Counted from the first letter of the stretch, positions 31,423 through 64,000 are shown. The stretch is DNA of 64,000 nucleotides from IMGVR_UViG_3300045970_000794:298103-362102; one strand, 5' to 3'. Notes: generated from the sequence alone by a model not told the origin. Numbers and translations are program-made.

Positions 31423-31881
31423 TTAGATGTATAAACTACTTGAAAAAACTGTATTACCATAGGTAATCGTACCAAAACTATTAATAACATAGACCCTAGC
31501 TGAATACCAATTTTGTGGTAATGTGATATCAGTTGAGTAAACACCTAACCCAGTACCACATAATACATTGTTATTAGTTATATCAGGCATTGTTGGGTTA
31601 AATATACTAATTAGTTTATAGCAAATGCCTCGCTGTATTTGATGATTACCACCATCAGTCAATACTTTACCGAATAACGTTACATCAGTACTATGAATAC
31701 CATAAATCGTTGGTGCGCATGTGTAAACTGACTCTTTAATATACTGATTATTTGCATTAGTATTATACTCAGAATACCTTGAAGTTGAATCAACAGTACT
31801 TTTAATGACTGGTGAATCATCTTTTTTACATGAAACTAATGACAGAACTACTAGTACTAATAATATTTTTTCATATCCCAT
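31423..31881 (-). CDS. putative lipoprotein with FN3-like domain
   Basis: LVSCKKD lipobox; DGG...RGICY...Y.ARVY.INS.G..YG. Confidence 0.7.
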   Translation of the reverse strand: MGYEKILLVLVVLSLVSCKKDDSPVIKSTVDSTSRYSEYNTNANNQYIKESVYTCAPTIYGIHSTDVTLFGKVLTDGGNHQIQRGICYKLISIFNPTMPDITNNNVLCGTGLGVYSTDITLPQNWYSARVYVINSFGTITYGNTVFSSSLYI

Positions 31882-52229: not shown

Positions 52230-52745
52230 TTATTTAAAATAAATATCTTTATATAAATCGATAAAATAATTCCCAATATAATAAGCCAAATCTTCACTTT
52301 TTAAATAAAGGGCCGAGGGAACAATCATATCACTAATATTGTAATCAGTGCTATAACAGGAAAACACACCGCTATTTTTATTAAAATAAGCGAAATATTT
52401 CATTTGAGAGTCATTATCCCAATCTGGATACCAGCCTTCATTTAATGCTTCGATAATTATACTTAATTTATAATAAGCAATTAAATGTTTATCTTTAAGC
52501 AATTTTAAGTCAATTGGTATTATATTAAGTTTAATACAAGCATCTTCAAACGAAGTAACACCCAATTTTTCACCAAAAATATATAAATTAGCTTTTATTA
52601 TTTTATTTCGTTCATTTAAATCGCCAACGCCTAAAATATCAAATATTTCATCTGAGTTTTTAATTGATATATAACTGAACTTTTCTTTAATTGTGGTAAT
52701 CCACCCATCAAAAGTTTGGTGTGGATTATAAAAATCTGGTTTCAT
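52230..52745 (-). CDS. DGR target protein 2
   Basis: Contains VR2; paralog of 53885-54436 (SFEDAC..L, ALNEGWYPD). Confidence 0.9.
   Translation of the reverse strand: MKPDFYNPHQTFDGWITTIKEKFSYISIKNSDEIFDILGVGDLNERNKIIKANLYIFGEKLGVTSFEDACIKLNIIPIDLKLLKDKHLIAYYKLSIIIEALNEGWYPDWDNDSQMKYFAYFNKNSGVFSCYSTDYNISDMIVPSALYLKSEDLAYYIGNYFIDLYKDIYFK
52312..52373 (-). repeat. DGR variable repeat VR2
   Basis: 8 differences from TR, all at TR adenines. Confidence 0.93.
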
Positions 52746-53691
52746 TTATATGTTTTTTAAGTAAATGTTTTCCGTTACAATGTTTAATCCAACCATTATA
52801 TGATGCAAATGACTTTTTATTAGGATTATTTTTCATCATCCGAATGAAATTTATTTTAATACCTTTTCGTAATAATATATGGGTATGATAAAATTTATAC
52901 CCAACAAAATCAACACCTCTATCTTTAACTGGAAATATCTGATAATTAGATTTTATTTTTAATAATAGTTTAGATTCAATATACCACTTAATATCACCTA
53001 ATAATTTATGTAATTCACTTTTACTAGATGAGAATATTACCATATCATCAGCATATCTAAAATAATATTTAACTAATTTTTCTTCTTTTAACCAATGGTC
53101 AAAATATGTTAAATATAAATTAGCAAAATACTGACTAGTATAATTACCTATTGGTAGACCATCCGTTGAATCAATAATCTCATCTAATAACCATAATAAA
53201 TCACTATCTTTTATTTTTCGTCTAATTATTGATTTTAGTATATCATGACTAATACTAGGATAAAATTTACTAATATCTAATTTTAAACAATATTCAGTAT
53301 TTTCAATATCTTTTAATGATTTTTTAACCGCATTAGCGGCACCATGTATTCCCCTACCTTTTATGCAACTATAAGTGTTACTAGTAAATATATTTACAAA
53401 TATCGGTTCCAAAATATTCATAATCGCATGATGGATAATTCTATCTGGATAATATGGTAAGGAAAAAATTAAACGTTCTTTACCCTCATTTATAATAAAG
53501 GTTTTATATTTAGATGTTTTAAATGTTTTATTAATTAATGATTCATGTAATCTTAAAATATTTAAATTTCTATCTTTATCAAATGAAATAACATCACATC
53601 TATTTTTCTTACCTTTTCTAGCTTTAGAATCAGCCAATTCTAAATTTTCAATAGATATTATTTTATCATATAAATTATTAAATCGTTTCAT
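52726..53691 (-). CDS. DGR reverse transcriptase
   Basis: KLDISKFYPSI, GLPIGNYTSQYFAN, RYADD; start MKRFNNLY at 53691. Confidence 0.95.
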   Translation of the reverse strand: MKRFNNLYDKIISIENLELADSKARKGKKNRCDVISFDKDRNLNILRLHESLINKTFKTSKYKTFIINEGKERLIFSLPYYPDRIIHHAIMNILEPIFVNIFTSNTYSCIKGRGIHGAANAVKKSLKDIENTEYCLKLDISKFYPSISHDILKSIIRRKIKDSDLLWLLDEIIDSTDGLPIGNYTSQYFANLYLTYFDHWLKEEKLVKYYFRYADDMVIFSSSKSELHKLLGDIKWYIESKLLLKIKSNYQIFPVKDRGVDFVGYKFYHTHILLRKGIKINFIRMMKNNPNKKSFASYNGWIKHCNGKHLLKKHINETRFL

Positions 53692-53803
53692 CCCTTTGTT
53701 ATTAATAGTTACGGTCTCTAATGATACTAGCACCTATTTAAAATTTAAATTTTTTACCATGTTGGTAAGGTTTATGTTATTAAGTAAGATTTAATAACAA
53801 GTT

Positions 53804-53865
53804 GCTGAGGGAACATTCATATTACTATTATTGTAATTAGTGTTATAATATGAAAACACACCGCT
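53804..53865 (-). ncRNA. DGR template repeat (TR)
   Basis: Intergenic AAY-rich copy: AGCGGTGTGTTTTCATATTATAACACTAATTACAATAATAGTAATATGAATGTTCCCTCAGC. Confidence 0.93.
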
Positions 53866-53884
53866 AATAACATAAACCAGAATT

Positions 53885-54436
53885 TTACATATAAAGTATC
53901 TCATACTCTCTAAGCGCAATTTTAATAGCATGTTTAGCTAATCCTTCGCTTTTTAAATAAAGGGCCGAGGGAACATTCATATTACTAATATTGAAATAAG
54001 TGTAATAATATGAAAACACACCGCTTTTAATTTCAAACCAATTATAATATTTATAATCATTTTTAGTAAAATCTGGATACCAACCTTCATTTAATGCTTT
54101 AATAATCGTTTTTAATTTTTTATATGCAATATCATTTGGTGTATCATATTGTAAACTAAATACTCCGTTCTGGTCTACATTAAGAACATTACAAGCATCC
54201 TCAAATGACTTAACTCGCTCAATAATGTTTTTTTCTTGTTTGAAAAACTTAGATAAAACAATTTTTTGTTTCTCATCTGATGCTGCAAACATTTCATTTA
54301 CTTCATTCTCAGTGAATTCAATGAACTCATCAAAATGATTCCGACTAGCATATTCTTCCAATTTTTTTTTCCAACTAAAACATGCAATGTCATGTATTAA
54401 TTTTAAATTTTTTCTAGATATTTGTTGTGTTTTCAT
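53885..54436 (-). CDS. DGR target protein 1
   Basis: Contains VR1; first gene after promoter at 54459. Confidence 0.9.
   Translation of the reverse strand: MKTQQISRKNLKLIHDIACFSWKKKLEEYASRNHFDEFIEFTENEVNEMFAASDEKQKIVLSKFFKQEKNIIERVKSFEDACNVLNVDQNGVFSLQYDTPNDIAYKKLKTIIKALNEGWYPDFTKNDYKYYNWFEIKSGVFSYYYTYFNISNMNVPSALYLKSEGLAKHAIKIALREYEILYM
53964..54025 (-). repeat. DGR variable repeat VR1
   Basis: 5 differences from TR, all at TR adenines. Confidence 0.93.
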
Positions 54437-54501: not shown

Positions 54502-55020
54502 CTATTTTTTTGGTATTGGTTTAAGCATAATAATTAATCTAGTACCTTCAAAAACTGGGGTTTTTTCAGCGATACAAACACCAGAGAGTTCATTAATCAC
54601 TTTCTCTAATATTTGATACCCGAATTCTTTATGAGACATTTCACGGCCTTTAAAAAAGACTGAGGTTTTAACTAAATTACCTTTAATTAACCACTCCTTA
54701 GCATGTTTAAGTTTAAAATTTAAATCATTCTCATCGATAGCTGGTCTTAATCTTAATTCTTTAACCTCAACCTTAACTGGTTTCTTCTCAGCTTTTTTCT
54801 TTTCGTAAATATATTTTTCAAAATCAACTACTTTACAGATTGAGATTTCTGGATTATTAGCATTTATTTCTAATAAATCTAGGTCTAGGTCATCAGCAAT
54901 TTTAATAGCTTCTTGAAGTGAGTAAATACCCACAGTTACATTATCACCAACAAGTCTAACTTGTTTAGCTCTAATATCGGAATTGATTTTATACCGATTA
55001 AATTTATTTTTTTCTTTCAT
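54502..55020 (-). CDS. infC: translation initiation factor IF-3
   Basis: IN..IRA..VRLVG, A...DLDL.EI, VKELRLRP.IDE.D..FK, FFKGRE. Confidence 0.93.
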   Translation of the reverse strand: MKEKNKFNRYKINSDIRAKQVRLVGDNVTVGIYSLQEAIKIADDLDLDLLEINANNPEISICKVVDFEKYIYEKKKAEKKPVKVEVKELRLRPAIDENDLNFKLKHAKEWLIKGNLVKTSVFFKGREMSHKEFGYQILEKVINELSGVCIAEKTPVFEGTRLIIMLKPIPKK

Positions 55021-55137: not shown

Positions 55138-55308
55138 ATGGAAAAAAATAGGCAGCGGTCACGTAAAAATGATGAAAATAAAACAGATTCAATGACAATT
55201 AGAATTGAACCTAAATTAAAAGAGCAATATTTGAAATTTTGTGAAGATAATGGATATTCATATGGAAAACGGTTGAGATTATTAATTAAAAAAGATTTAG
55301 ATAAATGA
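55138..55308 (+). CDS. small ribbon-helix-helix protein (56 aa, not in ORF track)
   Basis: MTIRIEPKLKEQY..FC..NG.S...RLR.LI; ATGA overlap with next gene. Confidence 0.65.
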   Translation: MEKNRQRSRKNDENKTDSMTIRIEPKLKEQYLKFCEDNGYSYGKRLRLLIKKDLDK

Positions 55309-56177
55309 GTAAAAAATTAACAATTGATGAGATAATTAATAAAATTATTGATAATGATTACGATTTTTCACAATCAAATTATGTATCATTAGATAAAAAA
55401 ATAATCGTAATTGATATTGACGGGTTTGAGCATTTAATAAGACCAGATAGTTTATTAGTTGGAAATAAATTAAATATTAAAAGTGTTATCAATAAAGAAA
55501 ATTATTTAATTAAAAAATTTAATAAAATTCACAAAAATTTATTTGATTATTCTAAATTCACATATATAAATTCTGACACTAAAATTGATATCATATGTCA
55601 GACCCACGGTATTTTTAAACAAACTATTAATAATCATTTAAGAGGTAAAGGATGTCCTAAATGTAATGGTAAAAATAAAAGTAATAATGATATTATCAAT
55701 GAGTTTAAATCAACTCATGGTAATAAATACAATTATTCAAAAGTAACATATAGTGGGATTAAAAATAAAGTAATTATTATATGTCCAAAACATGGTGAAT
55801 TTAAACAATCACCAGAGGAACATATTAAAGGTTGTGGATGTCCAATCTGTAAAGAATCTAATGGTGAACGTAAAATTAGGTTATTTTTAGAATCAAATAA
55901 TGTTTCATATATACCACAACATAAATTTAATGATTGTAAAAATATATTAAGTTTACCATTTGACTTCTATTTACCTGATTATAATACATGTATCGAATAT
56001 CAAGGTGAACAGCATTATAGACCTATCGAATATTTTGGTGGTATTAAACAATTCAATAAACAAATAATTAATGATAAAATAAAAATGGAATATTGCCAAA
56101 ACAACAATATTCCATTAATAATGATTAAATATGGTGAAAACATATTTGAAACATTAAAAAAATTTTCTAATATTTAA
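55305..56177 (+). CDS. putative homing endonuclease (DUF723-like repeats + nuclease domain)
   Basis: Same architecture as 37345-38439. Confidence 0.8.
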   Translation: MSKKLTIDEIINKIIDNDYDFSQSNYVSLDKKIIVIDIDGFEHLIRPDSLLVGNKLNIKSVINKENYLIKKFNKIHKNLFDYSKFTYINSDTKIDIICQTHGIFKQTINNHLRGKGCPKCNGKNKSNNDIINEFKSTHGNKYNYSKVTYSGIKNKVIIICPKHGEFKQSPEEHIKGCGCPICKESNGERKIRLFLESNNVSYIPQHKFNDCKNILSLPFDFYLPDYNTCIEYQGEQHYRPIEYFGGIKQFNKQIINDKIKMEYCQNNNIPLIMIKYGENIFETLKKFSNI

Positions 56178-57741
56178 ATGTTGTGAAATCGCCATTGGAA
56201 AATGTGATTAATTGAGCCTTACCATCTTGATGTATTATACAATGTGTTTGAGACCAACTACTTGGGCCTTCATTATACCCCACTCTAAGGTTTGTTGATG
56301 TTCCAACTTGTAGAACACCATCCTTTCTACCGCAACTATGGCTATGTCCAATAATCATCTTAGTATTTAATCTTCTAAATTGTTCTAATGAACCCCTAGA
56401 ACCATTAGCACCTACATCACCATGTTGAGCTAATTCCCATTTTTTAACTACATAACTATCTGAGCGATTTAACGTCTTAATTTTAGGGTAGTGTTTCTTA
56501 ATTATCCATGGAATTACACCATCTTTAGCTTCACCACTCAATATCGCAGCACTATATTGCATATATTCCAATGAATTTTTTGGGGTATTAGTTTTACGCC
56601 AATCGGTATTGATTAACCAACGGTCAACAAAATCATCATGGTTACTTCTAACAATAACAACATTATAGTTTTTGAATTTATCTAATTCGACTAACATTTC
56701 ATCAACTTCGTTTTTCAATGAATTTTTATTATTCATTTCTTTCTCATATTGAGTGAATGGGTTATCCATTTCATGATGATTAATTGAATGACCATTGAAT
56801 ATATCATGCATAATAACATGTTGTGGCTTTAATCTATTCAATAATTCTAACGTTTTTTCAATAACTTCATTGTCTTGGTCACCAACATGGTAATCACCCA
56901 AAACTATAGCGGCCGCTGAATCAATCGTTGTAACTTCACCTTTATCAACTCTATAAAATAAATCAGTAAAAGCACCAGCTTCATTGGCAGTTACCTGTCT
57001 TGCAAAAAATATTTCATCATCTTTTATTTCAACCACTACAAACCCGTATGTATGATGAAACTCACCCTTTTTACCAGCTTTAGAATCAGTGTAATCCTTA
57101 ATGGTGACAGCACCAGTGGTCATCATCATTTTAGGCTTTTGCGTATGTAACACAGGAATTGACATCATTTGCACTTTAGGTGCACCAAAAATACAAGAAT
57201 TAATACCTGACACACCTTCTAACCCAGACATTGGATTTACAGCTGTTGGTTGAATCTTAAAATCACCCATAATAGAAACGTACTTATGAACATTATGTCT
57301 AGCCGCATCTAAATATGGTAGGACTTCTTTTTCCCAATACTCATAATCTTTATCTGTGAAGATTGATGTTGGGTTTTTGTATCTACCAGCGATGATGTGG
57401 ATATCCGCATCTAAAAACTCAGCATATGCTTCCATATTTCTTAAAAGCCTTGTATGCACAGCGGTATTATTCTGGGCCCAACTAATAAGGAATCTTTTCT
57501 TTTCTTTATTAAAAACTCGCTGTTTAGCAAGTTCATATTGTTCTGAAGGTGTTTCAGTTACTTTTTCTTTAAAATGTAATCGTTCAAACCATTTTCGAAT
57601 AGTTCGTTCCGATACACCTAATTGAAGACCCAAATTAAATGCAATTTTTTCAACAGTTAAATTTGAATCTTTCCGACCATAATAAGCGTTTTTTAATGTT
57701 ATCTTATCTTGTTCAGTTAATTTTTTAAAACTTTTTTTCAT
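56167..57741 (-). CDS. metallophosphoesterase with N-terminal HTH
   Basis: GDYH, HD, SNHD, HGD, GHSH; VSERTIRKW. Confidence 0.8.
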   Translation of the reverse strand: MKKSFKKLTEQDKITLKNAYYGRKDSNLTVEKIAFNLGLQLGVSERTIRKWFERLHFKEKVTETPSEQYELAKQRVFNKEKKRFLISWAQNNTAVHTRLLRNMEAYAEFLDADIHIIAGRYKNPTSIFTDKDYEYWEKEVLPYLDAARHNVHKYVSIMGDFKIQPTAVNPMSGLEGVSGINSCIFGAPKVQMMSIPVLHTQKPKMMMTTGAVTIKDYTDSKAGKKGEFHHTYGFVVVEIKDDEIFFARQVTANEAGAFTDLFYRVDKGEVTTIDSAAAIVLGDYHVGDQDNEVIEKTLELLNRLKPQHVIMHDIFNGHSINHHEMDNPFTQYEKEMNNKNSLKNEVDEMLVELDKFKNYNVVIVRSNHDDFVDRWLINTDWRKTNTPKNSLEYMQYSAAILSGEAKDGVIPWIIKKHYPKIKTLNRSDSYVVKKWELAQHGDVGANGSRGSLEQFRRLNTKMIIGHSHSCGRKDGVLQVGTSTNLRVGYNEGPSSWSQTHCIIHQDGKAQLITFSNGDFTTFKY

Positions 57742-57742
57742 T

Positions 57743-58642
57743 TTAATTTTTTTTTAAAAGACTTATTATTTTATTAGGAATCTCATTATATTTAATTATA
57801 ATTAGATTTATATTATTTTTATCACAATATTTTTTTTTAATCACATCATTTAATTTAACATCAATTAAATACTTTTCACCACCAAAAAATTCAATTGGCT
57901 TATAATGTTGAATTCCGTTAAATTCGATGCATGTATTATAATCTGGTAAATAAAAATCAAATGGTAATGGTAGTTTATTTCTACATTCATTAAATTTATG
58001 TTGCGGAATGAATTTGATATTATTTTCCAATAATAGTAGTCGAATATTATTTTCACCTTTACTTTCTTTACAGATTGGACAACCAACACCTTTCAAATGA
58101 TTATGGGGCGTTTGGATAAATTCACCATGTTTAGGGCAAATAATTGTTATTTTGACATGTGATGTTATGTACTTAATTTTAGAATAGTCATATATTTCAC
58201 CATGAATTAACTTAGCTTTTTCAATAAAACACTTATTACCAACCCTTCTATTAAGAAAAGTACATTTTTCACAACGGCTACCTTTTAAATGATTATTTGG
58301 GGTTTGTTCAAACTCACCATGGGTGGGACATATTATTTTAATATTAGTGTTAAAATTAATATAATTAACCAATGAGTAATCATATTCATCACCATGAATT
58401 AACTTAGCTTTTTCGATAAAACACTTATTACCTAATCTCTGTTTTACATAACTACATTTTTTACATCCATCACCACTTAAATGAGCACTAGCCCTTTGAT
58501 TAAATATACCATGCTCTTTGCAAATAATATTCACATAATTTTTACTTTCAGTATAATTAACTAATGAATAATCATATTTTTCACCATGAATTAACTTAGC
58601 TTTTTCTATAAACTTTAAATTTTTTTCTAACATACTTACCAT
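57743..58642 (-). CDS. putative homing endonuclease (DUF723-like repeats + nuclease domain)
   Basis: FIEKAKLIHG..YDYS x3; FDFYLP...IEFNG.QH. Confidence 0.8.
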   Translation of the reverse strand: MVSMLEKNLKFIEKAKLIHGEKYDYSLVNYTESKNYVNIICKEHGIFNQRASAHLSGDGCKKCSYVKQRLGNKCFIEKAKLIHGDEYDYSLVNYINFNTNIKIICPTHGEFEQTPNNHLKGSRCEKCTFLNRRVGNKCFIEKAKLIHGEIYDYSKIKYITSHVKITIICPKHGEFIQTPHNHLKGVGCPICKESKGENNIRLLLLENNIKFIPQHKFNECRNKLPLPFDFYLPDYNTCIEFNGIQHYKPIEFFGGEKYLIDVKLNDVIKKKYCDKNNINLIIIKYNEIPNKIISLLKKN

Positions 58643-58891: not shown

Positions 58892-59932
58892 TTACCCCTT
58901 ACCCTTCAAATCCTCAATACTATAGTTGTTGTTGATAGCTATCAACGCTTTTGCGATATGTTTCGATACGCTAACAACTTCAATTTTTTCTTTTCCTCGT
59001 TGTTCATCAAGATTGATATCATGCTCCATACTAGTAAATGATGCTAAATCATAATTCAATGAATCACTAACAATCAGTTTTTCTAGTTTAGAATTACCAA
59101 TATTGTAATAAGCTTTTCCCGATAATACGCCATGAGTAGCAATCGCTCTAACTGATGCACCACCTTCATCAATGATAAGGTCAGCCGCTTTACATAAAGT
59201 ACCAGCAGTATCAACTATATCATCAACAAGAATAACATGTTTTTCAGCAACATTACCAATAAGAACCATATCATCAATTTCATTGGCTTTAACTCTGGTT
59301 TTGTCAATAACAACATAACCCATTTGTATGGCGAACTTTTCTTTTAATAAATCTCGTAAGTATTTAACTCTTTTAGATGCACCAGCATCTGGAGCACATA
59401 GAACCCATTCTTTACCAGATTTATCTTCTTTTACCATTTCAGCAATGTGATGAGCAAATAAGTATCGACCTTCAATATGTGTTAATGGTATCTTGAAAAA
59501 TCCTTGAATCTGGTCCGCATGTAATTCAAACGTAACTACAGCATCAGCACCACGATTTTCAATCATTTCGGCGATTACCTTAGCACCAATTGGTGCTCTA
59601 GCTCTATCCTTTTTATCTTGACGAGCATATGGGAAATATGGTAATATAACAATAATCTCTTTAGCAGATGCTCTTCTAACAGCATCAATGGCTAGATTAA
59701 GAGCCATTATTTTATCGGATGAATTTGGTGATGTCATTATGTACACCCTAGCACCACGAACACTATCTTTAATATCAACAATTAACTCGCCATCAGAGAA
59801 CTTCTTAACATAAATCCCACCCTTAGTTAATGTACTACTGGTCGAATATTTCTTACATTGAGTTTGGAACTCAGTAATAACATTGAAAACTAAATCTTCT
59901 CTTTGGTCAACGGATAATAAAATTGATTTCAT
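58892..59932 (-). CDS. prs: ribose-phosphate pyrophosphokinase
   Basis: FSDGE, PYFPYARQDKK, ELHADQIQGFF, APDAG, LVDDIVDTAGT, ATHG. Confidence 0.95.
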   Translation of the reverse strand: MKSILLSVDQREDLVFNVITEFQTQCKKYSTSSTLTKGGIYVKKFSDGELIVDIKDSVRGARVYIMTSPNSSDKIMALNLAIDAVRRASAKEIIVILPYFPYARQDKKDRARAPIGAKVIAEMIENRGADAVVTFELHADQIQGFFKIPLTHIEGRYLFAHHIAEMVKEDKSGKEWVLCAPDAGASKRVKYLRDLLKEKFAIQMGYVVIDKTRVKANEIDDMVLIGNVAEKHVILVDDIVDTAGTLCKAADLIIDEGGASVRAIATHGVLSGKAYYNIGNSKLEKLIVSDSLNYDLASFTSMEHDINLDEQRGKEKIEVVSVSKHIAKALIAINNNYSIEDLKGKG

Positions 59933-60175
59933 ATTATTGTTATTTTTTGCAAAGATAGTAATAATTTTTTAATAAAACAACATTTTTTCAATTTTTATCA
60001 CATTAAAATCAATTACTTATACAATTATCACTAAATGGTTTCATAAGTTATTGAAACATAATTAATTACGTTTTGTAAAATTAAAAGATGTTTATGTATG
60101 GGCGTGAAAATGAATATTTATTATTGTAAACATTACATTACAAAATAAAATATAATACAAAAAAAAATTAAAATT

Positions 60176-61462
60176 ATGGCACAATTTATTAAAATTGAAT
60201 GGGATGCAAGTCCATCACCAATTTCGGGATATAATGTATATCGTGGTGGTGCTGACGGCAATGAATCAAATGTACCACTTAATACTTCACCAATTACGGA
60301 TACATTTTATGACGACTATACAATATTTCCTGGTAAGGTATATTGCTATACCGTTACAGCTGTTTTAAACGGTGTGGAAAGTACCAACTCACTAAAAATT
60401 TATACTGAGCCAATTGGATTTATTAATTCACCAGCACAATTAGATTTAGGTGCTTTCGCTGGATTTGGTTTGCTAGCAGCGACTACAATTACTAACGTTC
60501 CTGGAACTGGAACCACATCAGACGTAACTGGTGATGTTGGTGTATTTCCAGGTTCATCAATCACTGGTTTTGAATCAGTTAGAATTTCTGGTTCATACCA
60601 TTTAGCTGATTATGTAGCTGGTTATGCACAAAGTTCATTAACAAATACGTTTCTTACTGGTATGGCATTAACTGGTGCAACCTCAGTTCCAGCCGATTTG
60701 GGTGGCCTTGTTTTAATACCAGGAATTTATTCAGCCGCTACTTCAGCTGCCATTACTGGCGTTTTAGTATTGAATGCTGAAGGTAATCCAGATGCTGTTT
60801 GGGTTTTCCAAATAGGTTCAACATTAACTACTGCTGCTGGCAATAGCACTGTTGTCCTAGTTGGTGGTGCTCAAGCAACAAACGTTACTTGGTTAGTCGG
60901 TTCTTCAGCAACTATGGGTGTTGATACAATTTTCGCTGGTAATGTTATTGCATATGCATCAATCACAGTAAATACTAACGCATCTGTTTGCGGAAGATTA
61001 GGTGCTAGAACAGCTGCAATTACATTAGATAAAAATGCTATTATTATTTACGGTTCTTGTTATGAGCCTTTGCCAGCATCGCCAGCAAATACACCACCAG
61101 AACCACCAAGTGCACCAACAGGTGTTCACGTTGATGATTTAAATGCTGATGGTTTAGTTAATAATATTCCAATATTACCAATTGTTACAACGTCAGTTAT
61201 TAGTATGTTGTCAGAAACTTCCGCAAATGGTGGTGGTAACATAACACATGATGGTTATGATGTTATTATCGCACGTGGAGTTTGTTGGAGTACTAACATC
61301 AATCCATTATTAACTGGAAGCCATACAATTGATGGTTCGGGTGTTGGTGTATTCACATCTTTAATTGCAAATTTATTACCATTCACAACGTATTATGTTA
61401 GAGCTTACGCTGTAAACTCTGCTGGTACTGCTTATGGTGATAACGTAATGTTCATCAATTAA
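60176..61462 (+). CDS. ice-binding-like (DUF3494) protein flanked by FN3-like domains
   Basis: TGDVGV.PG.SITGF, DLGGL.L.PGIY, GNPDAVWVFQIGSTLTTA, GAQATNV.W.VGSSAT; FN3 GYNVYR and TTYYVRAYA. Confidence 0.88.
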   Translation: MAQFIKIEWDASPSPISGYNVYRGGADGNESNVPLNTSPITDTFYDDYTIFPGKVYCYTVTAVLNGVESTNSLKIYTEPIGFINSPAQLDLGAFAGFGLLAATTITNVPGTGTTSDVTGDVGVFPGSSITGFESVRISGSYHLADYVAGYAQSSLTNTFLTGMALTGATSVPADLGGLVLIPGIYSAATSAAITGVLVLNAEGNPDAVWVFQIGSTLTTAAGNSTVVLVGGAQATNVTWLVGSSATMGVDTIFAGNVIAYASITVNTNASVCGRLGARTAAITLDKNAIIIYGSCYEPLPASPANTPPEPPSAPTGVHVDDLNADGLVNNIPILPIVTTSVISMLSETSANGGGNITHDGYDVIIARGVCWSTNINPLLTGSHTIDGSGVGVFTSLIANLLPFTTYYVRAYAVNSAGTAYGDNVMFIN

Positions 61463-61475
61463 AATAATAATGAAT

Positions 61476-61500
61476 TCCCACAAAGGTTATCTTTGTGGGA
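61476..61500 (+). terminator. stem-loop between the two DUF3494 genes
   Basis: TCCCACAAAG-gttat-CTTTGTGGGA; no strong U tract. Confidence 0.5.
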
Positions 61501-61533
61501 GCTTATTAAATAAACATAAATAAACTTAAAATT

Positions 61534-62640
61534 ATGGCCTCAATATTTCAAAGATTAAAAATACCAACTTCAATTTCAACCGTATCAACAGGATTATTTA
61601 ATTCATTAATGGATTATTTTGATAAAGGTATAAGTGGTATATTTTTCACAACACCAATTCGTTATTCTACTAGCTATGGTATAACAGCAAATCCTAATGG
61701 TGGTCAAGCACATGCAACTAGATTGTTAAGTGAAATAAATAATGTAGATATAGTTTCAACAAACGGTGATAGTGTAAAATTAATGACTGCATTACCAGGT
61801 TATTCTATAACTGTAAAAAATAATGGATTAAAAAATTTATTAGTTTACCCATACGAATTGGATAAAATTGATGAAGAACTAGCTGACGTTCCAATAACAA
61901 TGCTACCAGAAGAAACAAGAGTCTTTAAATCAATTAGTGATTCTCGTTGGGAAAGTATGCCAAATAGTCTTCAAACTATTACCTACGTGTTGAGTGGTAA
62001 TTCATTGCCAACAACACCATCAGTTTATGACTTAAAATTAGCGTCTACTTTTGCCATTCTTACTGATGGTGCGATTACAATTAGTAATCCACAATTAATA
62101 ATACCTTATGGACGTTCTGGTGAAGCAAGTTTAACACCAACAACTGGTATAACATTTATCAATGGCTCTGATGCTGGATTAAGCGCTAGTGCTGTGACTG
62201 ATTCAAATACTTTATTTAATGAATTAGTTGTTTTGACTGGTTATACTTTCGGTGCAGTTAATTTAGAAACCGTGAATGTTGGATATGGTGCTGGTACATT
62301 TATGTCTGGCGTTTATATTGGCTCAACTAGTATAGTAACATCAGCCTCTCAAACTATAAAATTAGTTGGTGATGGTGATTATATTTTCATAAGTCAAGGT
62401 GCTATGACATTCGGTGCATCAACAACAATTGAACTAACACATGGTGCGCAAGCTAGTAGAGTATATTGGGTATCTGTAGGTGCTATTACTACTGGTGCAG
62501 TTAATATTCTTAAAGGAAACTTTATCACATCAGCTGCAATTAATATCGGAGCAACAAATGATATTGAAGGTAGACTATTATCAACATTAACCTCTGAAAT
62601 AACAATAGATGGTATAGCAACTAATATTTACTTACCATAA
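61534..62640 (+). CDS. protein with C-terminal DUF3494 ice-binding-like domain
   Basis: FAIL..GAI, F..GVY, YIF...GA.T, L..GAQASRVYW...GA.T, GRLLS. Confidence 0.75.
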   Translation: MASIFQRLKIPTSISTVSTGLFNSLMDYFDKGISGIFFTTPIRYSTSYGITANPNGGQAHATRLLSEINNVDIVSTNGDSVKLMTALPGYSITVKNNGLKNLLVYPYELDKIDEELADVPITMLPEETRVFKSISDSRWESMPNSLQTITYVLSGNSLPTTPSVYDLKLASTFAILTDGAITISNPQLIIPYGRSGEASLTPTTGITFINGSDAGLSASAVTDSNTLFNELVVLTGYTFGAVNLETVNVGYGAGTFMSGVYIGSTSIVTSASQTIKLVGDGDYIFISQGAMTFGASTTIELTHGAQASRVYWVSVGAITTGAVNILKGNFITSAAINIGATNDIEGRLLSTLTSEITIDGIATNIYLP

Positions 62641-62659
62641 TTAAAAATTTCTTAATACA

Positions 62660-62959
62660 ATGAAAAATAAACAACCATTAAAAAAATCAATAGTGATTGA
62701 ACCTATTATTGATGTTAAAAATGATATTGTAGTTTGGTCTTACAACACAAAACGCAATAAATCACAAATAGTTGATGAATCTAACCAATTAATTAATGAA
62801 ATTGGTGATTATAAACTTGAAAATTTAGATTTAATTAAAAAAATGATAAATCTTCATAATGAATATAGGTTCCCAATAGCTCAACTTACTGACACTAGTA
62901 AAAAAAGTGTTGATATAGCACACCAGTTTTTAATTTTCTTAAAAGAAACAAGTAAATAA
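62660..62959 (+). CDS. hypothetical protein
   Basis: 99-aa ORF. Confidence 0.6.
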   Translation: MKNKQPLKKSIVIEPIIDVKNDIVVWSYNTKRNKSQIVDESNQLINEIGDYKLENLDLIKKMINLHNEYRFPIAQLTDTSKKSVDIAHQFLIFLKETSK

Positions 62960-63029
62960 ACAATAATATGATATTAGTAGCCATTTAGTTGGCTATTAAT
63001 ATTGTAATTTGTAAAAAACTATATGAAAA

Positions 63030-64000
63030 ATGAACGATATAATTATTGATTACAAAAAACATCTTAACATAGGGCTAGGCGGTAGTATAATAACAAATGG
63101 ATTACCATGTATCTCCGCATGGGTAACTGTTGGTTCAAAAATACCGAATGTTCTTCGGACTACCTTATCCAATGAGACACCTAAAATAATTATACCAACT
63201 CCAACAATAAATAACAATAGACAATTAAGTTTTTTAAAGGTTAATAATTACGATACAGTTAGTACAATAGTTTTAATTAATGTAAATAGTGGTGATGGTA
63301 CTAGCTATAACATGAATTTAATTAATGTATTATTATCACCACAAGAAACATTATTTTACACCATTTTAGATGGGTTTTACATTATGGATTATAATGGTAA
63401 AACTAAAAATATACAAAATAATATTGAAGTGACACCCGTTACTGGTATTACTATTAGTGGTACGGTTAATTTAGATTTATACTATACAAAAAATGAATCG
63501 AATCTATTATTATTCGATAAATCTAATATCGGCCATACTCATTCACAATATTTAACTGGATATACAACTGGATATACAATTGATTTAAACTCGTATTCAT
63601 TAACTGGACATACACACACAATCGAATCATTAAGTGGTGTTAGTACTACTATTTTCAATAATTACACTGGTGCTACCAACCCACATGGTATTACAATTAG
63701 TCAGTTGAGTGGCGTATCATTGAATACTTTCACAACATATACAGCGACAACATTAAGTGCAGTTATAACAGCTTTAGATTCTGTATTAGCATATGCTTCT
63801 TTATATGAAAACAATGCAAGTGGAACAACTATAAATGTAAGTAACACAGGCCAAACAGGTTGGGTTACAGCTGTACTCGCTGCGAATCATTTAACTACTT
63901 TAACAAAGAATAGTAAATCTGATAGAATCACAATATTAAGTGGTGCTTCTGGAACATTTCAAATTGGATTTACAGCTAATGTTAGCGTATCAAACACAAC
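63030..64000 (+). CDS. partial structural/tail-fibre-like protein (runs off window)
   Basis: ATG 63030; in-frame GHTHSQYLTG and TGHTH motifs; Thr/Ser/Gly-rich. Confidence 0.55.
   Translation, partial: MNDIIIDYKKHLNIGLGGSIITNGLPCISAWVTVGSKIPNVLRTTLSNETPKIIIPTPTINNNRQLSFLKVNNYDTVSTIVLINVNSGDGTSYNMNLINVLLSPQETLFYTILDGFYIMDYNGKTKNIQNNIEVTPVTGITISGTVNLDLYYTKNESNLLLFDKSNIGHTHSQYLTGYTTGYTIDLNSYSLTGHTHTIESLSGVSTTIFNNYTGATNPHGITISQLSGVSLNTFTTYTATTLSAVITALDSVLAYASLYENNASGTTINVSNTGQTGWVTAVLAANHLTTLTKNSKSDRITILSGASGTFQIGFTANVSVSNT

What the first reader, a model, noticed from the sequence alone, without database searches (positions are those of the whole stretch)
60176..64000. Tandem DUF3494 ice-binding-like genes without signal peptides beside a fibre-like gene
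Seen: an FN3-DUF3494-Pro linker-FN3 protein and a second DUF3494 protein, both lacking obvious signal peptides, at the switch to a plus-strand structural-like cluster. Established: DUF3494 beta-solenoids bind ice and are usually secreted. Inference: virion decorations for ice or surface adhesion, or for freeze protection.
Basis: partly seen in the sequence, partly recalled or inferred. Interest (0 to 1): 0.62.

Follow-up and report, generated by a model that had tools for sequence, protein, structure and literature searches.

The report
Ice-binding-fold proteins on a jumbo phage
A 362-kb phage from a pond carries a small conserved gene island whose two main products have the fold of microbial ice-binding proteins but no export signal and fibre-like features, and the same fold is built into tail-sheath and baseplate proteins of other uncultured phages, so it is probably displayed on virus particles, although whether it binds ice or something else is untested.

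Summary
Gene A (60176-61462) is FN3, DUF3494, Pro-rich linker, FN3-like. Gene B (61534-62640) is an N-terminal beta-sandwich plus DUF3494. Neither has a signal peptide or membrane segment.

The "structural-like cluster" does not hold. It is a five-gene plus-strand island (A, B, small C, fibre-like D, AraC-type E) among NAD-salvage and homing-endonuclease genes, more than 100 kb from terminase and sheath. The window ends at an assembly junction, so D and E continue at the genome start.

The island recurs in at least four related phage contigs with differing flanks. Indirect evidence favours particle display:
- B's N-domain resembles tailspike and baseplate domains.
- B is predicted to trimerise, and relatives carry collagen repeats.
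- Among 52 IMG/VR loci, the sampled DUF3494 proteins include tail-sheath and baseplate-wedge fusions.

GenBank phages, PHROGs and BFVD phage entries lack the domain.

A keeps the Thr/Ser-rich face that binds ice in AnpIBP, including both residues whose mutation cuts activity. Streptomyces homologues keep it too, so sequence cannot tell ice from another ligand. Habitat is "pond metagenome", with no cold evidence.

Verdict: a new variant of a known kind.

The parts
59933..60175 (+). AT-rich divergent intergenic region upstream of gene A. It presumably holds the island's promoter. There is no Shine-Dalgarno sequence before the ATG.
   Evidence: ORF map. Alignment of the upstream regions of five related loci shows only weak conservation. 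The sigma-70-like hits are no more frequent than in shuffled sequence.
60176..61462 (+). Gene A, 428 aa, acidic, with no signal peptide. Layout: FN3 (aa 1-80; nt 60176-60415), DUF3494 beta-solenoid (aa ~88-295; nt 60437-61060), Pro-rich linker (aa 296-338; nt 61061-61189), FN3-like domain (aa 339-428; nt 61190-61459).
   Evidence: Pfam. Model and fold matches. PDB sequence matches: 6EIO E 3.8e-33, 7BWX E 3.7e-30. Hydropathy. Face analysis.
61476..61500 (+). Hairpin with a 10-bp stem, 14 nt after A's stop codon and without a T-run. It could be an attenuator or an RNA-stabilising element. It is not conserved in relatives whose A-B spacer is about 25 nt.
   Evidence: gene coordinates of the relatives.
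61534..62640 (+). Gene B, 368 aa, with no signal peptide. Layout: N-terminal helix and viral beta-sandwich module (aa 1-147; nt 61534-61974), short linker (collagen-like G-X-Y repeats in some relatives), DUF3494 solenoid (aa ~160-368; nt 62011-62637).
   Evidence: Pfam. Model. VIA alignments. Family alignment with collagen repeats. Trimer prediction. Profile search of the N-domain.
62660..62959 (+). Gene C, 99 aa, with no known family. It is conserved directly after B in all four relatives examined (37-61% identity; invariant HNEYRFP motif). It may be an assembly factor or partner (inference).
63030..64000 (+). Gene D, fibre-like; the first 323 of 399 codons lie in the window and the rest lies at the genome start (G000 positions ~128-356). 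It has a conserved N-domain (~160 aa), a variable-length repeat shaft with GHTH/HxH-type repeats, and a conserved C-terminal head that resembles C1q/TNF-like domains. Gene E (AraC-type HTH, split by a frameshift) follows outside the window at G000 440-983.
   Evidence: Comparison with the 479- and 561-aa homologues. Weak PF12789 hit, E 0.019. Atlas leads, all viral, with a C1q-like head at TM 0.71 by target. Gene E. An independent contig crosses the junction.

Best explanation
Genes A to D most likely encode surface proteins of the phage particle, and E is a linked regulator.

B is most likely a homotrimeric short fibre. An N-terminal helix and a viral beta-sandwich module hold three chains together, and each chain ends in a DUF3494 solenoid. 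In some relatives a collagen-like stalk separates the two parts.

A is a solenoid held between two FN3-type spacer domains, of the kind that decorate phage capsids and tails. D is a separate fibre with a C1q-like head. C is a small conserved partner.

The working part of A and B would be the flat solenoid face that binds ice in characterised family members. On the particle it would act as an adhesion surface for an ordered, hydroxyl-rich ligand that does not depend on the host species. That ligand could be ice or a common polysaccharide matrix.

Shown: the domain architecture and folds, the absence of export signals, the conservation of the island, the fusions of the domain to sheath and baseplate proteins in other phages, and the intact ice-binding-type face of A.

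Inferred: incorporation into the particle, trimerisation, timing of expression, and the ligand.
For: 1. Fold and architecture.

2. No export route. A and B have no signal peptide. Of the IMG/VR phage DUF3494 ORFs analysed, only two (the identical L024/L025 lipoprotein-like ORFs) reach the leader-like score of 2.5. About 15 of 19 cellular homologues used as calibration do.

3. B residues 44-147 align to phage tail proteins:
- Solidus tailspike, Z 12.6, rmsd 2.3, 87 aa;
- CBA120 TSP4 residues 79-178, Z 10.0;
- T4 gp9, Z 9.0;
- KP1 baseplate cup, Z 8.0-8.4;
- T4 baseplate complex chain 5iv5_AC, Z 7.4.

4. Trimer prediction for B residues 1-165, three copies: median ipSAE 0.74 (runs 0.91, 0.22, 0.74), best of three controls 0.00. 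The runs agree in at least 44% of contacts and the partner pLDDT is at least 70. In the tool's calibration the mark was reached by 20 of 30 solved pairs and 1 of 23 single chains, and that calibration holds only roughly here. Collagen G-X-Y repeats occur in four B relatives.

5. D has conserved ends, a shaft of variable length and a C1q-like head.

6. The order A-B-C is conserved in four related contigs. D is present in two of them and E in three. The flanks differ between contigs.

7. In other phages the domain sits inside:
- tail-sheath proteins: phrog_279 matches beside the DUF3494 insert in L049 and L062;
- giant baseplate-wedge proteins: phrog_6 in L038 and L031.

8. Genes for DUF3494 proteins also lie:
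- between large terminase and portal (L014);
- beside the large terminase, portal or major head protein (L058, L065, L055);
- directly upstream of a holin.

9. A's ice-site-equivalent face is 67% Thr/Ser against 22% domain-wide. It is more conserved than the rest of the domain (0.88 against 0.70; 0 of 10,000 random residue sets reached it). The face is kept across 49 phage domains from contigs of GC 0.24-0.64.
Against: No particle proteome, expression data or microscopy exists for this phage.

The island lies more than 100 kb from the terminase and sheath genes, among metabolic and homing-endonuclease genes.

No PHROG structural family matches A, B or D, and no domain of A, B or D recurs in a recognised tail gene of this genome.

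B's N-domain is a widespread repeat module: 3,417 representative proteins, also found in a giant-virus protein. Its likeness to tailspike adaptor domains therefore does not prove attachment to a tail.

One of the three trimer runs scored only 0.22.

A linked AraC-type regulator is unusual for structural genes.

The conserved Thr/Ser face is a signature of the whole subfamily, including homologues from Streptomyces, so its conservation may be partly structural.
Confidence: 0.55

Rival explanations
1. Ice is the ligand. The particle-borne solenoids bind ice. They either anchor virions to ice surfaces and brine veins, or inhibit recrystallisation around the particle and so protect it through freeze-thaw cycles in a seasonally frozen pond.
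For: The only measured activity of the family is ice binding.

A is 35-38% identical to EfcIBP (6EIO) and AnpIBP (7BWX/7BWY).

S243 and T246 of A align with AnpIBP S153 and T156. Replacing either of those with Tyr cut thermal hysteresis to 17% (PMC7277481). Both residues are invariant in family A.

The face has no bulky or charged outward residue except at one edge.

The face is kept whatever the host GC or the carrier protein. That fits a ligand that does not depend on the host.

A domain placed on the sheath surface cannot reach a host receptor.
Against: Homologues from mesophilic Streptomyces and PEP-CTERM proteins have the same face.

PF11999 occurs in many ice-free habitats (PMC12337378).

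The habitat label is only 'pond metagenome'. No temperature data could be obtained for any sample.

B's face is much less Thr/Ser-rich (41%) and not significantly conserved (P 0.06).
Confidence: 0.25
2. Host-directed cryoprotection gene (auxiliary metabolic gene). The phage makes an ice-binding protein for the benefit of the infected cell, as proposed for PF11999 genes on Arctic viral contigs.
For: Three Arctic viral contigs with PF11999 genes were interpreted in this way (PMC11515562). The island lies among metabolic genes for NAD salvage.
Against: Known microbial ice-binding proteins of this family act outside the cell. A and B have no signal peptide, lipobox, T9SS or PEP-CTERM domain.

They are fused to FN3 and viral beta-sandwich modules, and a fibre gene follows them.

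In other phages the domain is part of sheath and baseplate proteins.

The link that the paper drew to Synechococcus phage S-SKS1 could not be reproduced: PF11999 finds nothing in NC_020851.
Confidence: 0.1
3. Accessory cassette not built into the particle. A to D are soluble proteins released at lysis, or a cassette controlled by the AraC-type protein E. They might modify the surroundings or coat host debris, for example as a decoy or for biofilm binding.
For: The island has its own regulator. It has different flanks in each relative. It lies in a plastic region rich in homing endonucleases. A has no recognisable particle-binding domain.
Against: B's tail-protein-like N-domain and predicted trimer. 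D's fibre layout. The direct fusions of the domain to structural proteins elsewhere.
Confidence: 0.1
4. Specific receptor-binding proteins. The solenoids recognise a particular host surface polysaccharide, as pectate-lyase-type tailspikes do, and so determine host range.
For: Beta-solenoids are the commonest fold of phage receptor-binding proteins. B has a fibre layout. A's C-terminal FN3-like domain is 49-69% identical to repeats of Bacteroidales surface proteins (FISUMP/TIGR02145), which suggests exchange with the presumed host group.
Against: Receptor-binding surfaces usually vary between phages of different hosts. Here the candidate face is the most conserved part of the domain and is kept across contigs of GC 0.24-0.64.

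Sheath-inserted copies cannot contact a receptor.

No catalytic or sugar-binding motif is known for the family.
Confidence: 0.15

Closest known systems
Type-1 (DUF3494) microbial ice-binding proteins: EfcIBP (6EIO), AnpIBP (7BWX), FfIBP (4NU2), ColAFP (3WP9)
   Same: Same Pfam family and fold: a triangular right-handed beta-solenoid with a long helix alongside. A is 35-38% identical to EfcIBP and AnpIBP. [quoted passage not shown]
   Different: The known proteins are secreted, single-domain or cell-anchored proteins of cold-adapted cells. A and B are phage-encoded, have no export signal, and are fused to FN3 or viral beta-sandwich modules. No activity has been measured for them.
Multi-domain bacterial ice-binding proteins (IBPv 5UYT, two DUF3494 domains; SfIBP_1 6BG8, whose depositors name the molecule 'Ig domain protein, group 2 domain protein') and fibrillar adhesins with an Ice_binding tip (Monzon et al., bioRxiv 10.1101/2020.12.07.414375)
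   Same: DUF3494 combined with further domains. In the fibrillar-adhesin scheme, stalk domains project an adhesive tip, and PF11999 is listed among the adhesive domains as one that binds ice.
   Different: Those are cell-surface proteins. Here the stalk is a viral beta-sandwich or collagen module, and the carrier is presumably a virus particle.
Phage tailspike and baseplate adaptor domains: CBA120 TSP4 N-terminal region (7RFO), T4 gp9 (1QEX), Klebsiella phage KP1 baseplate cup (9F4B), Solidus gp83 (24QJ)
   Same: B residues 44-147 share their beta-sandwich fold (Z 8-12.6) and are predicted to trimerise.
   Different: There is no detectable sequence similarity. The module is a widespread tandem repeat that also occurs in a giant-virus protein. 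A role in tail attachment is therefore not established.
Ig-like and FN3 decoration domains of tailed phages, such as T4 Hoc (recalled from the literature, not tested here)
   Same: FN3 domains flank the functional domain. A's N-terminal FN3 matches the FN3 of a Bacillus phage major tail protein at 47% identity.
   Different: No capsid- or tail-binding domain was recognised in A. The displayed domain is a solenoid and not an Ig fold.
PF11999 'cryoprotection AMGs' on Arctic viral contigs (Rahlff et al. 2024, PMC11515562) and the DUF3494 proteins of the giant virus Hyperionvirus (BFVD)
   Same: Virus-encoded PF11999 proteins.
   Different: Those reports rest on annotation alone and assume a benefit to the host. 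Neither noted the missing export signals, the fibre-type architectures, or the fusions to sheath and baseplate proteins.

Membership tests
DUF3494 / PF11999 ice-binding-like fold | Match to the Pfam model above the gathering score | tested here: met
   A scores 162.5 bits and B 48.3 bits against a cut-off of 28.7. The whole-genome scan finds only these two copies.
DUF3494 / PF11999 ice-binding-like fold | Right-handed beta-solenoid with a long alpha-helix packed alongside | tested here: met
   In the models the helix spans 146-163 in A and 218-232 in B. Foldseek TM by target is 0.87-0.92 for A. VIA gives Z 25-28 at rmsd 1.4-2.1 over 189-197 residues for B.
Functional ice-binding protein (type 1) | Flat B-face whose outward residues are small and hydroxylated, including the residues validated in AnpIBP | tested here: inconclusive
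   A: 18 of 27 outward residues are Thr or Ser and 24 of 27 are T/S/A/G. S243 and T246 align with AnpIBP S153 and T156. B: 41% Thr/Ser. Mesophile homologues share A's face, so the feature does not discriminate.
Functional ice-binding protein (type 1) | Measured thermal hysteresis or ice recrystallisation inhibition | not testable with these tools
   This needs recombinant protein and ice assays.
Functional ice-binding protein (type 1) | Export to the cell exterior (signal peptide, T9SS, PEP-CTERM or lipoprotein signal), as in the cellular members examined here | tested here: not met
   Hydropathy scores are 0.01 (A) and 1.49 (B), against 2.5 or more for about 15 of 19 cellular homologues with an obvious leader. 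No sorting domain was found. The 19-residue hydropathy maxima are low.
Phage tail fibre or tailspike (receptor-binding protein) | Homotrimer | tested here: inconclusive
   In silico only: median ipSAE 0.74 against a best control of 0.00, with one run at 0.22. Collagen repeats in relatives imply trimers.
Phage tail fibre or tailspike (receptor-binding protein) | N-terminal domain homologous to a known particle-attachment domain | tested here: inconclusive
   Structural likeness to the CBA120 TSP4, T4 gp9 and T4 baseplate (5iv5_AC) domains at Z 7.4-12.6. The module is a widespread repeat, and no PHROG tail family matches.
Phage tail fibre or tailspike (receptor-binding protein) | Gene located in the tail or baseplate module | tested here: not met
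   Terminase lies at about 251.5 kb and the sheath-like gene at about 167 kb, while the island lies at 358.3-362.1 kb and the first 1 kb. The flanks hold NAD-salvage and homing-endonuclease genes.
Phage tail fibre or tailspike (receptor-binding protein) | Presence in purified particles | not testable with these tools
   There is no isolate and no proteome.
Target of a diversity-generating retroelement | Template/variable repeat pair with adenine-specific mismatches near a reverse transcriptase | tested here: not met
   A reverse transcriptase lies at 52726-53733, but no repeat links it to A, B or D. The paralogous ORFs that flank it differ at all four bases.

The most novel reading that the evidence does not exclude
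Tailed phages of seasonally frozen waters and soils build genuine ice-binding solenoids into their particles, on fibres, on the tail sheath and on the baseplate. The particle itself would then adhere to ice or suppress recrystallisation around it. That would be a structural antifreeze or ice-adhesion system in viruses, spread across many phage lineages.
Probability: 0.25. Interest if true: 0.85.

Novelty: new variant of a known kind. Interest (0 to 1): 0.64.

Why it matters
DUF3494 is the commonest ice-binding fold in microbes, yet it is also frequent where there is no ice, and its role there is unknown. Virus-encoded copies have been read as gifts to the host.

The missing export signals, the fibre-type architectures and the fusions to tail-sheath and baseplate proteins point to a different use, as a surface module of the virus particle. 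This use is absent from the phage reference sets searched here (GenBank phages, PHROGs, BFVD), but was found at 52 loci in IMG/VR with only two search patterns.

If the ligand is ice, this would be a new way for viruses to persist through freezing, and a source of multivalent ice-binding scaffolds. If the ligand is a polysaccharide, it would give the family a second function and explain its presence in ice-free habitats.

Either way the question is now directly testable with two small recombinant proteins.

Tried and rejected
Searches that gave nothing:
- PHROGs gave no hit for A, B or D.
- tblastn of A against 50,697 GenBank phages hit only the FN3 domains.
- A single-protein IMG/VR scan with B found nothing. 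The scan with the family-B alignment found only the two known relatives and one weak hit.
- PF11999 is absent from Synechococcus phage S-SKS1, contrary to the hint in PMC11515562.
- PDB sequence search with D's homologue gave nothing.
- Ten proteins carrying B's N-module have no Pfam match and only two weak PHROG matches of unknown function. None carries a functional name at its source (one JGI copy is labelled only 'hypothetical protein'). The contexts of two were uninformative.

Promoters and expression:
- Footprinting upstream of A across five loci gave no clear shared motif.
- Sigma-70-like sites are at the level of shuffled sequence.
- No RNA run holds the stretch, so expression could not be tested.

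Other tests that led nowhere:
- phmmer of each domain of A-D against all ORFs of the genome found only one FN3-like paralogue.
- The diversity-generating retroelement hypothesis was rejected.
- Full-text searches for the sample and run identifiers found nothing useful, so the habitat of the related samples remains unknown.
- The second pond run is identical wherever it is covered, so microdiversity gives no signal.
- Single-linkage clustering of the phage DUF3494 proteins outside the matched domain merged 30 of them and was not informative.

Steps left out: the full-length D protein spans the assembly junction and has no single reference. It was therefore searched in two parts and through its complete homologues, and no fold of D was made.


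Full report
**Where the window lies.** The window is the last 64 kb of a 362,102-bp viral record with 30% G+C. Its 127-bp terminal direct repeat has the size of an assembler overlap. An independent contig of the source run continues 2.7 kb past the window's end. The record is therefore best read as circular or circularly permuted, and the window's end is an assembly junction and not a biological end. The last open frame of the window (63030 onward) continues at the genome start and is 399 codons long.

**Checking the observation.** Two adjacent plus-strand genes are present as described.
- A (60176-61462, 428 aa) matches Pfam PF11999 at residues 100-289 (E 1.4e-47) and fn3 at 349-418.
- B (61534-62640, 368 aa) matches PF11999 at 217-360 (E 1.2e-12).

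Models built on alignments of 18 and 16 relatives (pLDDT 81 and 77) show the domain layouts.
- A: FN3 domain, solenoid with flanking helix, disordered Pro-rich linker, second FN3-like domain.
- B: weakly modelled N-terminal helix, beta-sandwich (44-147), short linker, and a complete solenoid (160-368). This solenoid is longer than the Pfam match suggested.

Both solenoids match every solved DUF3494 ice-binding protein. For A, Foldseek TM by target is 0.87-0.92 with 35-38% identity to 6EIO and 7BWX/7BWY. For B, Z is 25-28.

Neither protein can be extended upstream. On a hydropathy score calibrated on cellular homologues, about 15 of 19 calibrators, all with an obvious leader, score 2.5 or more. 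A scores 0.01 and B 1.49. The 19-residue hydropathy maxima are low, and no T9SS or PEP-CTERM domain is present. The two solenoids share only about 23% identity, so they are not a recent tandem duplication.

**The surroundings.** The 'plus-strand structural-like cluster' is a five-gene island.
- A and B.
- C (62660-62959, 99 aa, no known family).
- D, which is fibre-like.
- E, an AraC-type HTH gene at genome 440-983.

In this genome E is split by a frameshift. Its N-terminal domain is encoded at genome 440-613 in one frame and its HTH part at 618-947 in the next. This may be a real mutation or an assembly error.

On both sides lie minus-strand genes for PRPP synthetase, nicotinamide phosphoribosyltransferase and an NMN adenylyltransferase/Nudix protein, together with many HNH and GIY-YIG homing endonucleases. 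The large terminase (about 251.5 kb) and a sheath-like gene (about 167 kb) are more than 100 kb away.

**Relatives.** A and B each have relatives at 65-76% identity, and these always occur together on the same contigs. In four contigs whose DNA could be read (340, 66, 29 and 13 kb), the order A-B-C is kept.
- D is present in two contigs, and E in three.
- The flanks differ in each.
- C is 37-61% identical across them, with an invariant HNEYRFP motif.
- E's HTH part is 48-53% identical.
- D's first 160 and last 150 residues are conserved (41-60%), while its repeat-rich middle varies from about 90 to about 250 residues.
- The Atlas places D's homologue only among viral clusters, with a C1q-like C-terminal head (TM 0.71 by target). 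This is a lead, not proof.

Four B relatives carry collagen-like G-X-Y runs between the N-domain and the solenoid.

**Is it part of the particle?** There is no direct evidence, but several indirect lines agree.

First, B residues 44-147 align to domains of phage tail proteins. These rows form a block directly below the ice-binding proteins, interrupted by a pilin and a bactofilin that match B's solenoid.
- Solidus tailspike: Z 12.6.
- CBA120 TSP4 residues 79-178: Z 10.0.
- T4 gp9: Z 9.0.
- KP1 baseplate cup: Z 8.0-8.4.
- T4 baseplate complex chain 5iv5_AC: Z 7.4.
- Pa223 capsid spike: Z 7.4.

Second, three copies of B residues 1-165 are predicted to associate. The median ipSAE is 0.74 (runs 0.91, 0.22, 0.74) and the best of three controls is 0.00. 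Contact agreement is at least 44% and partner pLDDT at least 70. In the tool's calibration the mark was reached by 20 of 30 solved pairs and 1 of 23 single chains, and that calibration holds only roughly here.

Third, the domain sits in structural proteins of other phages. A scan of IMG/VR with only two peptide patterns from family A returned 52 loci. Of the ORFs that carry the domain, only two (the identical L024/L025 lipoprotein-like ORFs) reach the leader-like score of 2.5, and many are 900-2,900 aa long. Family scans of fifteen of them show the domain:
- inside tail-sheath proteins, where phrog_279 matches next to the DUF3494 insert (L049, L062);
- inside giant baseplate-wedge proteins (phrog_6; L038 and L031).

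The N-termini printed suggest about eight sheath-type and about five baseplate-type loci in all.

Fourth, free-standing copies lie in late or morphogenetic contexts:
- between large terminase and portal (L014);
- next to the large terminase, portal or major head protein (L058, L065, L055);
- directly upstream of a holin;
- beside a BclA_C-like fibre gene.

Against this reading, the island is not in a recognised structural module, and no PHROG structural family matches A, B or D. B's N-domain also turns out to be a widespread module that neither Pfam nor PHROGs matched in B. It occurs in 3,417 representative proteins, in up to 11 tandem copies. The protein with 10 copies lies about 4 kb from an NCLDV major capsid gene. 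The module marks large viral surface proteins in general and not tail attachment in particular.

**Does it bind ice?** The ice-binding site of AnpIBP has been defined by structure and mutation. It comprises six six-residue rungs and one four-residue loop segment on the B-face, and S153Y or T156Y reduces activity to 17% (PMC7277481). I carried these positions over through the HMMER alignment.

In A, the 27 outward-pointing residues are 67% Thr/Ser (22% across the domain) and 89% T/S/A/G. None is bulky, and there is a central Thr ladder. S243 and T246 correspond to the two validated residues and are invariant in family A. The face is more conserved than the rest of the domain (0.88 against 0.70; 0 of 10,000 random residue sets reached it). 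B's face is weaker (41% Thr/Ser; P 0.06).

The face persists in 49 phage domains from contigs of G+C 0.24-0.64, whichever protein carries the domain. That argues for a ligand that does not depend on the host.

The control matters, however. Cellular homologues of the same subfamily, including four from Streptomyces, have the same face. The family is also reported from many ice-free habitats (PMC12337378). Sequence therefore shows that A has not lost the ice-binding-type surface, but cannot show that ice is its natural ligand.

The only habitat label obtained is 'pond metagenome', from two studies. The habitats of the related samples could not be retrieved.

**Host.** This is an inference. The spacers before the start codons are A-rich and lack a Shine-Dalgarno sequence. 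A's C-terminal FN3-like domain is 49-69% identical to repeats in surface proteins named from Bacteroidales and Bacteroidia genomes. B's nearest cellular relatives are Bacteroidota proteins with a T9SS sorting domain. A Bacteroidota host is likely.

**Comparison with what is known.** The fold family is known. Virus-borne PF11999 genes have been listed before as presumed cryoprotection genes on three Arctic viral contigs (PMC11515562). Three also occur in a giant virus in BFVD.

The domain is absent from the phage reference sets searched here: 50,697 GenBank phages searched with A, PHROGs and BFVD phage entries. The suggested homologue in phage S-SKS1 could not be found. Full-text searches for DUF3494 or PF11999 together with phage gave no report of a structural role.

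Bacterial fibrillar adhesins with an Ice_binding tip are the closest architectural parallel.

**Verdict.** The particle-display reading is the best supported (about 0.55), but it remains inferred. Ice as the ligand is plausible (about 0.25 overall) and directly testable. The finding is a new variant of a known kind: a signal-less, fibre-type and structural-fusion use of the ice-binding fold by phages.

Noticed in passing
window 52230-54436 (minus strand): A reverse transcriptase gene (52726-53733; PF00078 E 9e-21, phrog_1423 E 4e-123) is flanked by two paralogous small ORFs (52230-52745 and 53885-54436). They share about 330 nt at about 71% identity. The mismatches fall on all four bases, so this is not a diversity-generating retroelement pair. 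The role of this three-gene unit is unknown.
   Followed up: partly
G000 genome 440-983 (just beyond the window's end; L003): The AraC-type gene E is split by a frameshift between its N-terminal domain (440-613) and its HTH domain (618-947). It is intact in relatives L004 and L006. This could be a pseudogene, an assembly error or a programmed shift.
   Followed up: partly
window 58892-59932 (minus); L003 5850-7424 and 7975-8961 (minus): The phage carries an NAD-salvage set: PRPP synthetase, nicotinamide phosphoribosyltransferase and a cytidylyltransferase-like/Nudix protein (probable NMN adenylyltransferase-Nudix). These genes bracket the island.
   Followed up: no
window 55305-58642; L003 1978-4302 and 8971-10503: The region is dense in HNH and GIY-YIG homing endonuclease genes. 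Two HNH paralogues on opposite strands form a 371-nt inverted repeat around a phrog_1745 gene (56167-57741). One HNH gene (57743-58642) contains three tandem 192-nt repeats.
   Followed up: no
window 54502-55020 (minus): A 172-aa protein matches a PHROG annotated as translation initiation factor (phrog_9787, E 4e-38).
   Followed up: no
window 61534-61974 (B residues 1-147); proteins P0264-P0409: B's N-terminal beta-sandwich belongs to a large family with no Pfam match and no functionally annotated PHROG match in the proteins scanned. It has 3,417 representative proteins at E 0.001 or better, often with 2-11 tandem copies in proteins of up to 4,411 aa. One of them lies beside an NCLDV major capsid gene on a 447-kb contig (L073). 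It is a candidate new viral surface-repeat domain.
   Followed up: partly
L006 18083-21281: The 66-kb relative carries a Cas3-like helicase-nuclease and a Cas7fv-like gene about 7 kb downstream of its island. This suggests a phage-borne CRISPR-Cas system.
   Followed up: no
window 31423-31881 (minus): A 152-aa ORF contains a paralogue of A's C-terminal FN3-like domain (phmmer E 1.6e-7). It is the only other copy of any island domain in the genome.
   Followed up: no
protein P0174 (16.9-kb contig labelled Candidatus Saccharimonadales MAG): This 'ice-binding family protein' has the phage-type layout: the FN3 domain starts at residue 1, there is no signal peptide, and the core is 58% identical to A. 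The contig may be a phage or prophage binned into the genome.
   Followed up: no
L049-L052, L054, L062, L063, L066; L031, L036, L038, L047, L056: Tail-sheath proteins of about 920-946 aa with a DUF3494 insert, and baseplate-wedge-type proteins of 1,575-2,919 aa that mostly carry two DUF3494 copies (L031 and the truncated L036 show one), recur in several IMG/VR samples. Some contigs hold both kinds, for example 3300029922_000007 and 3300037231_000119.
   Followed up: partly
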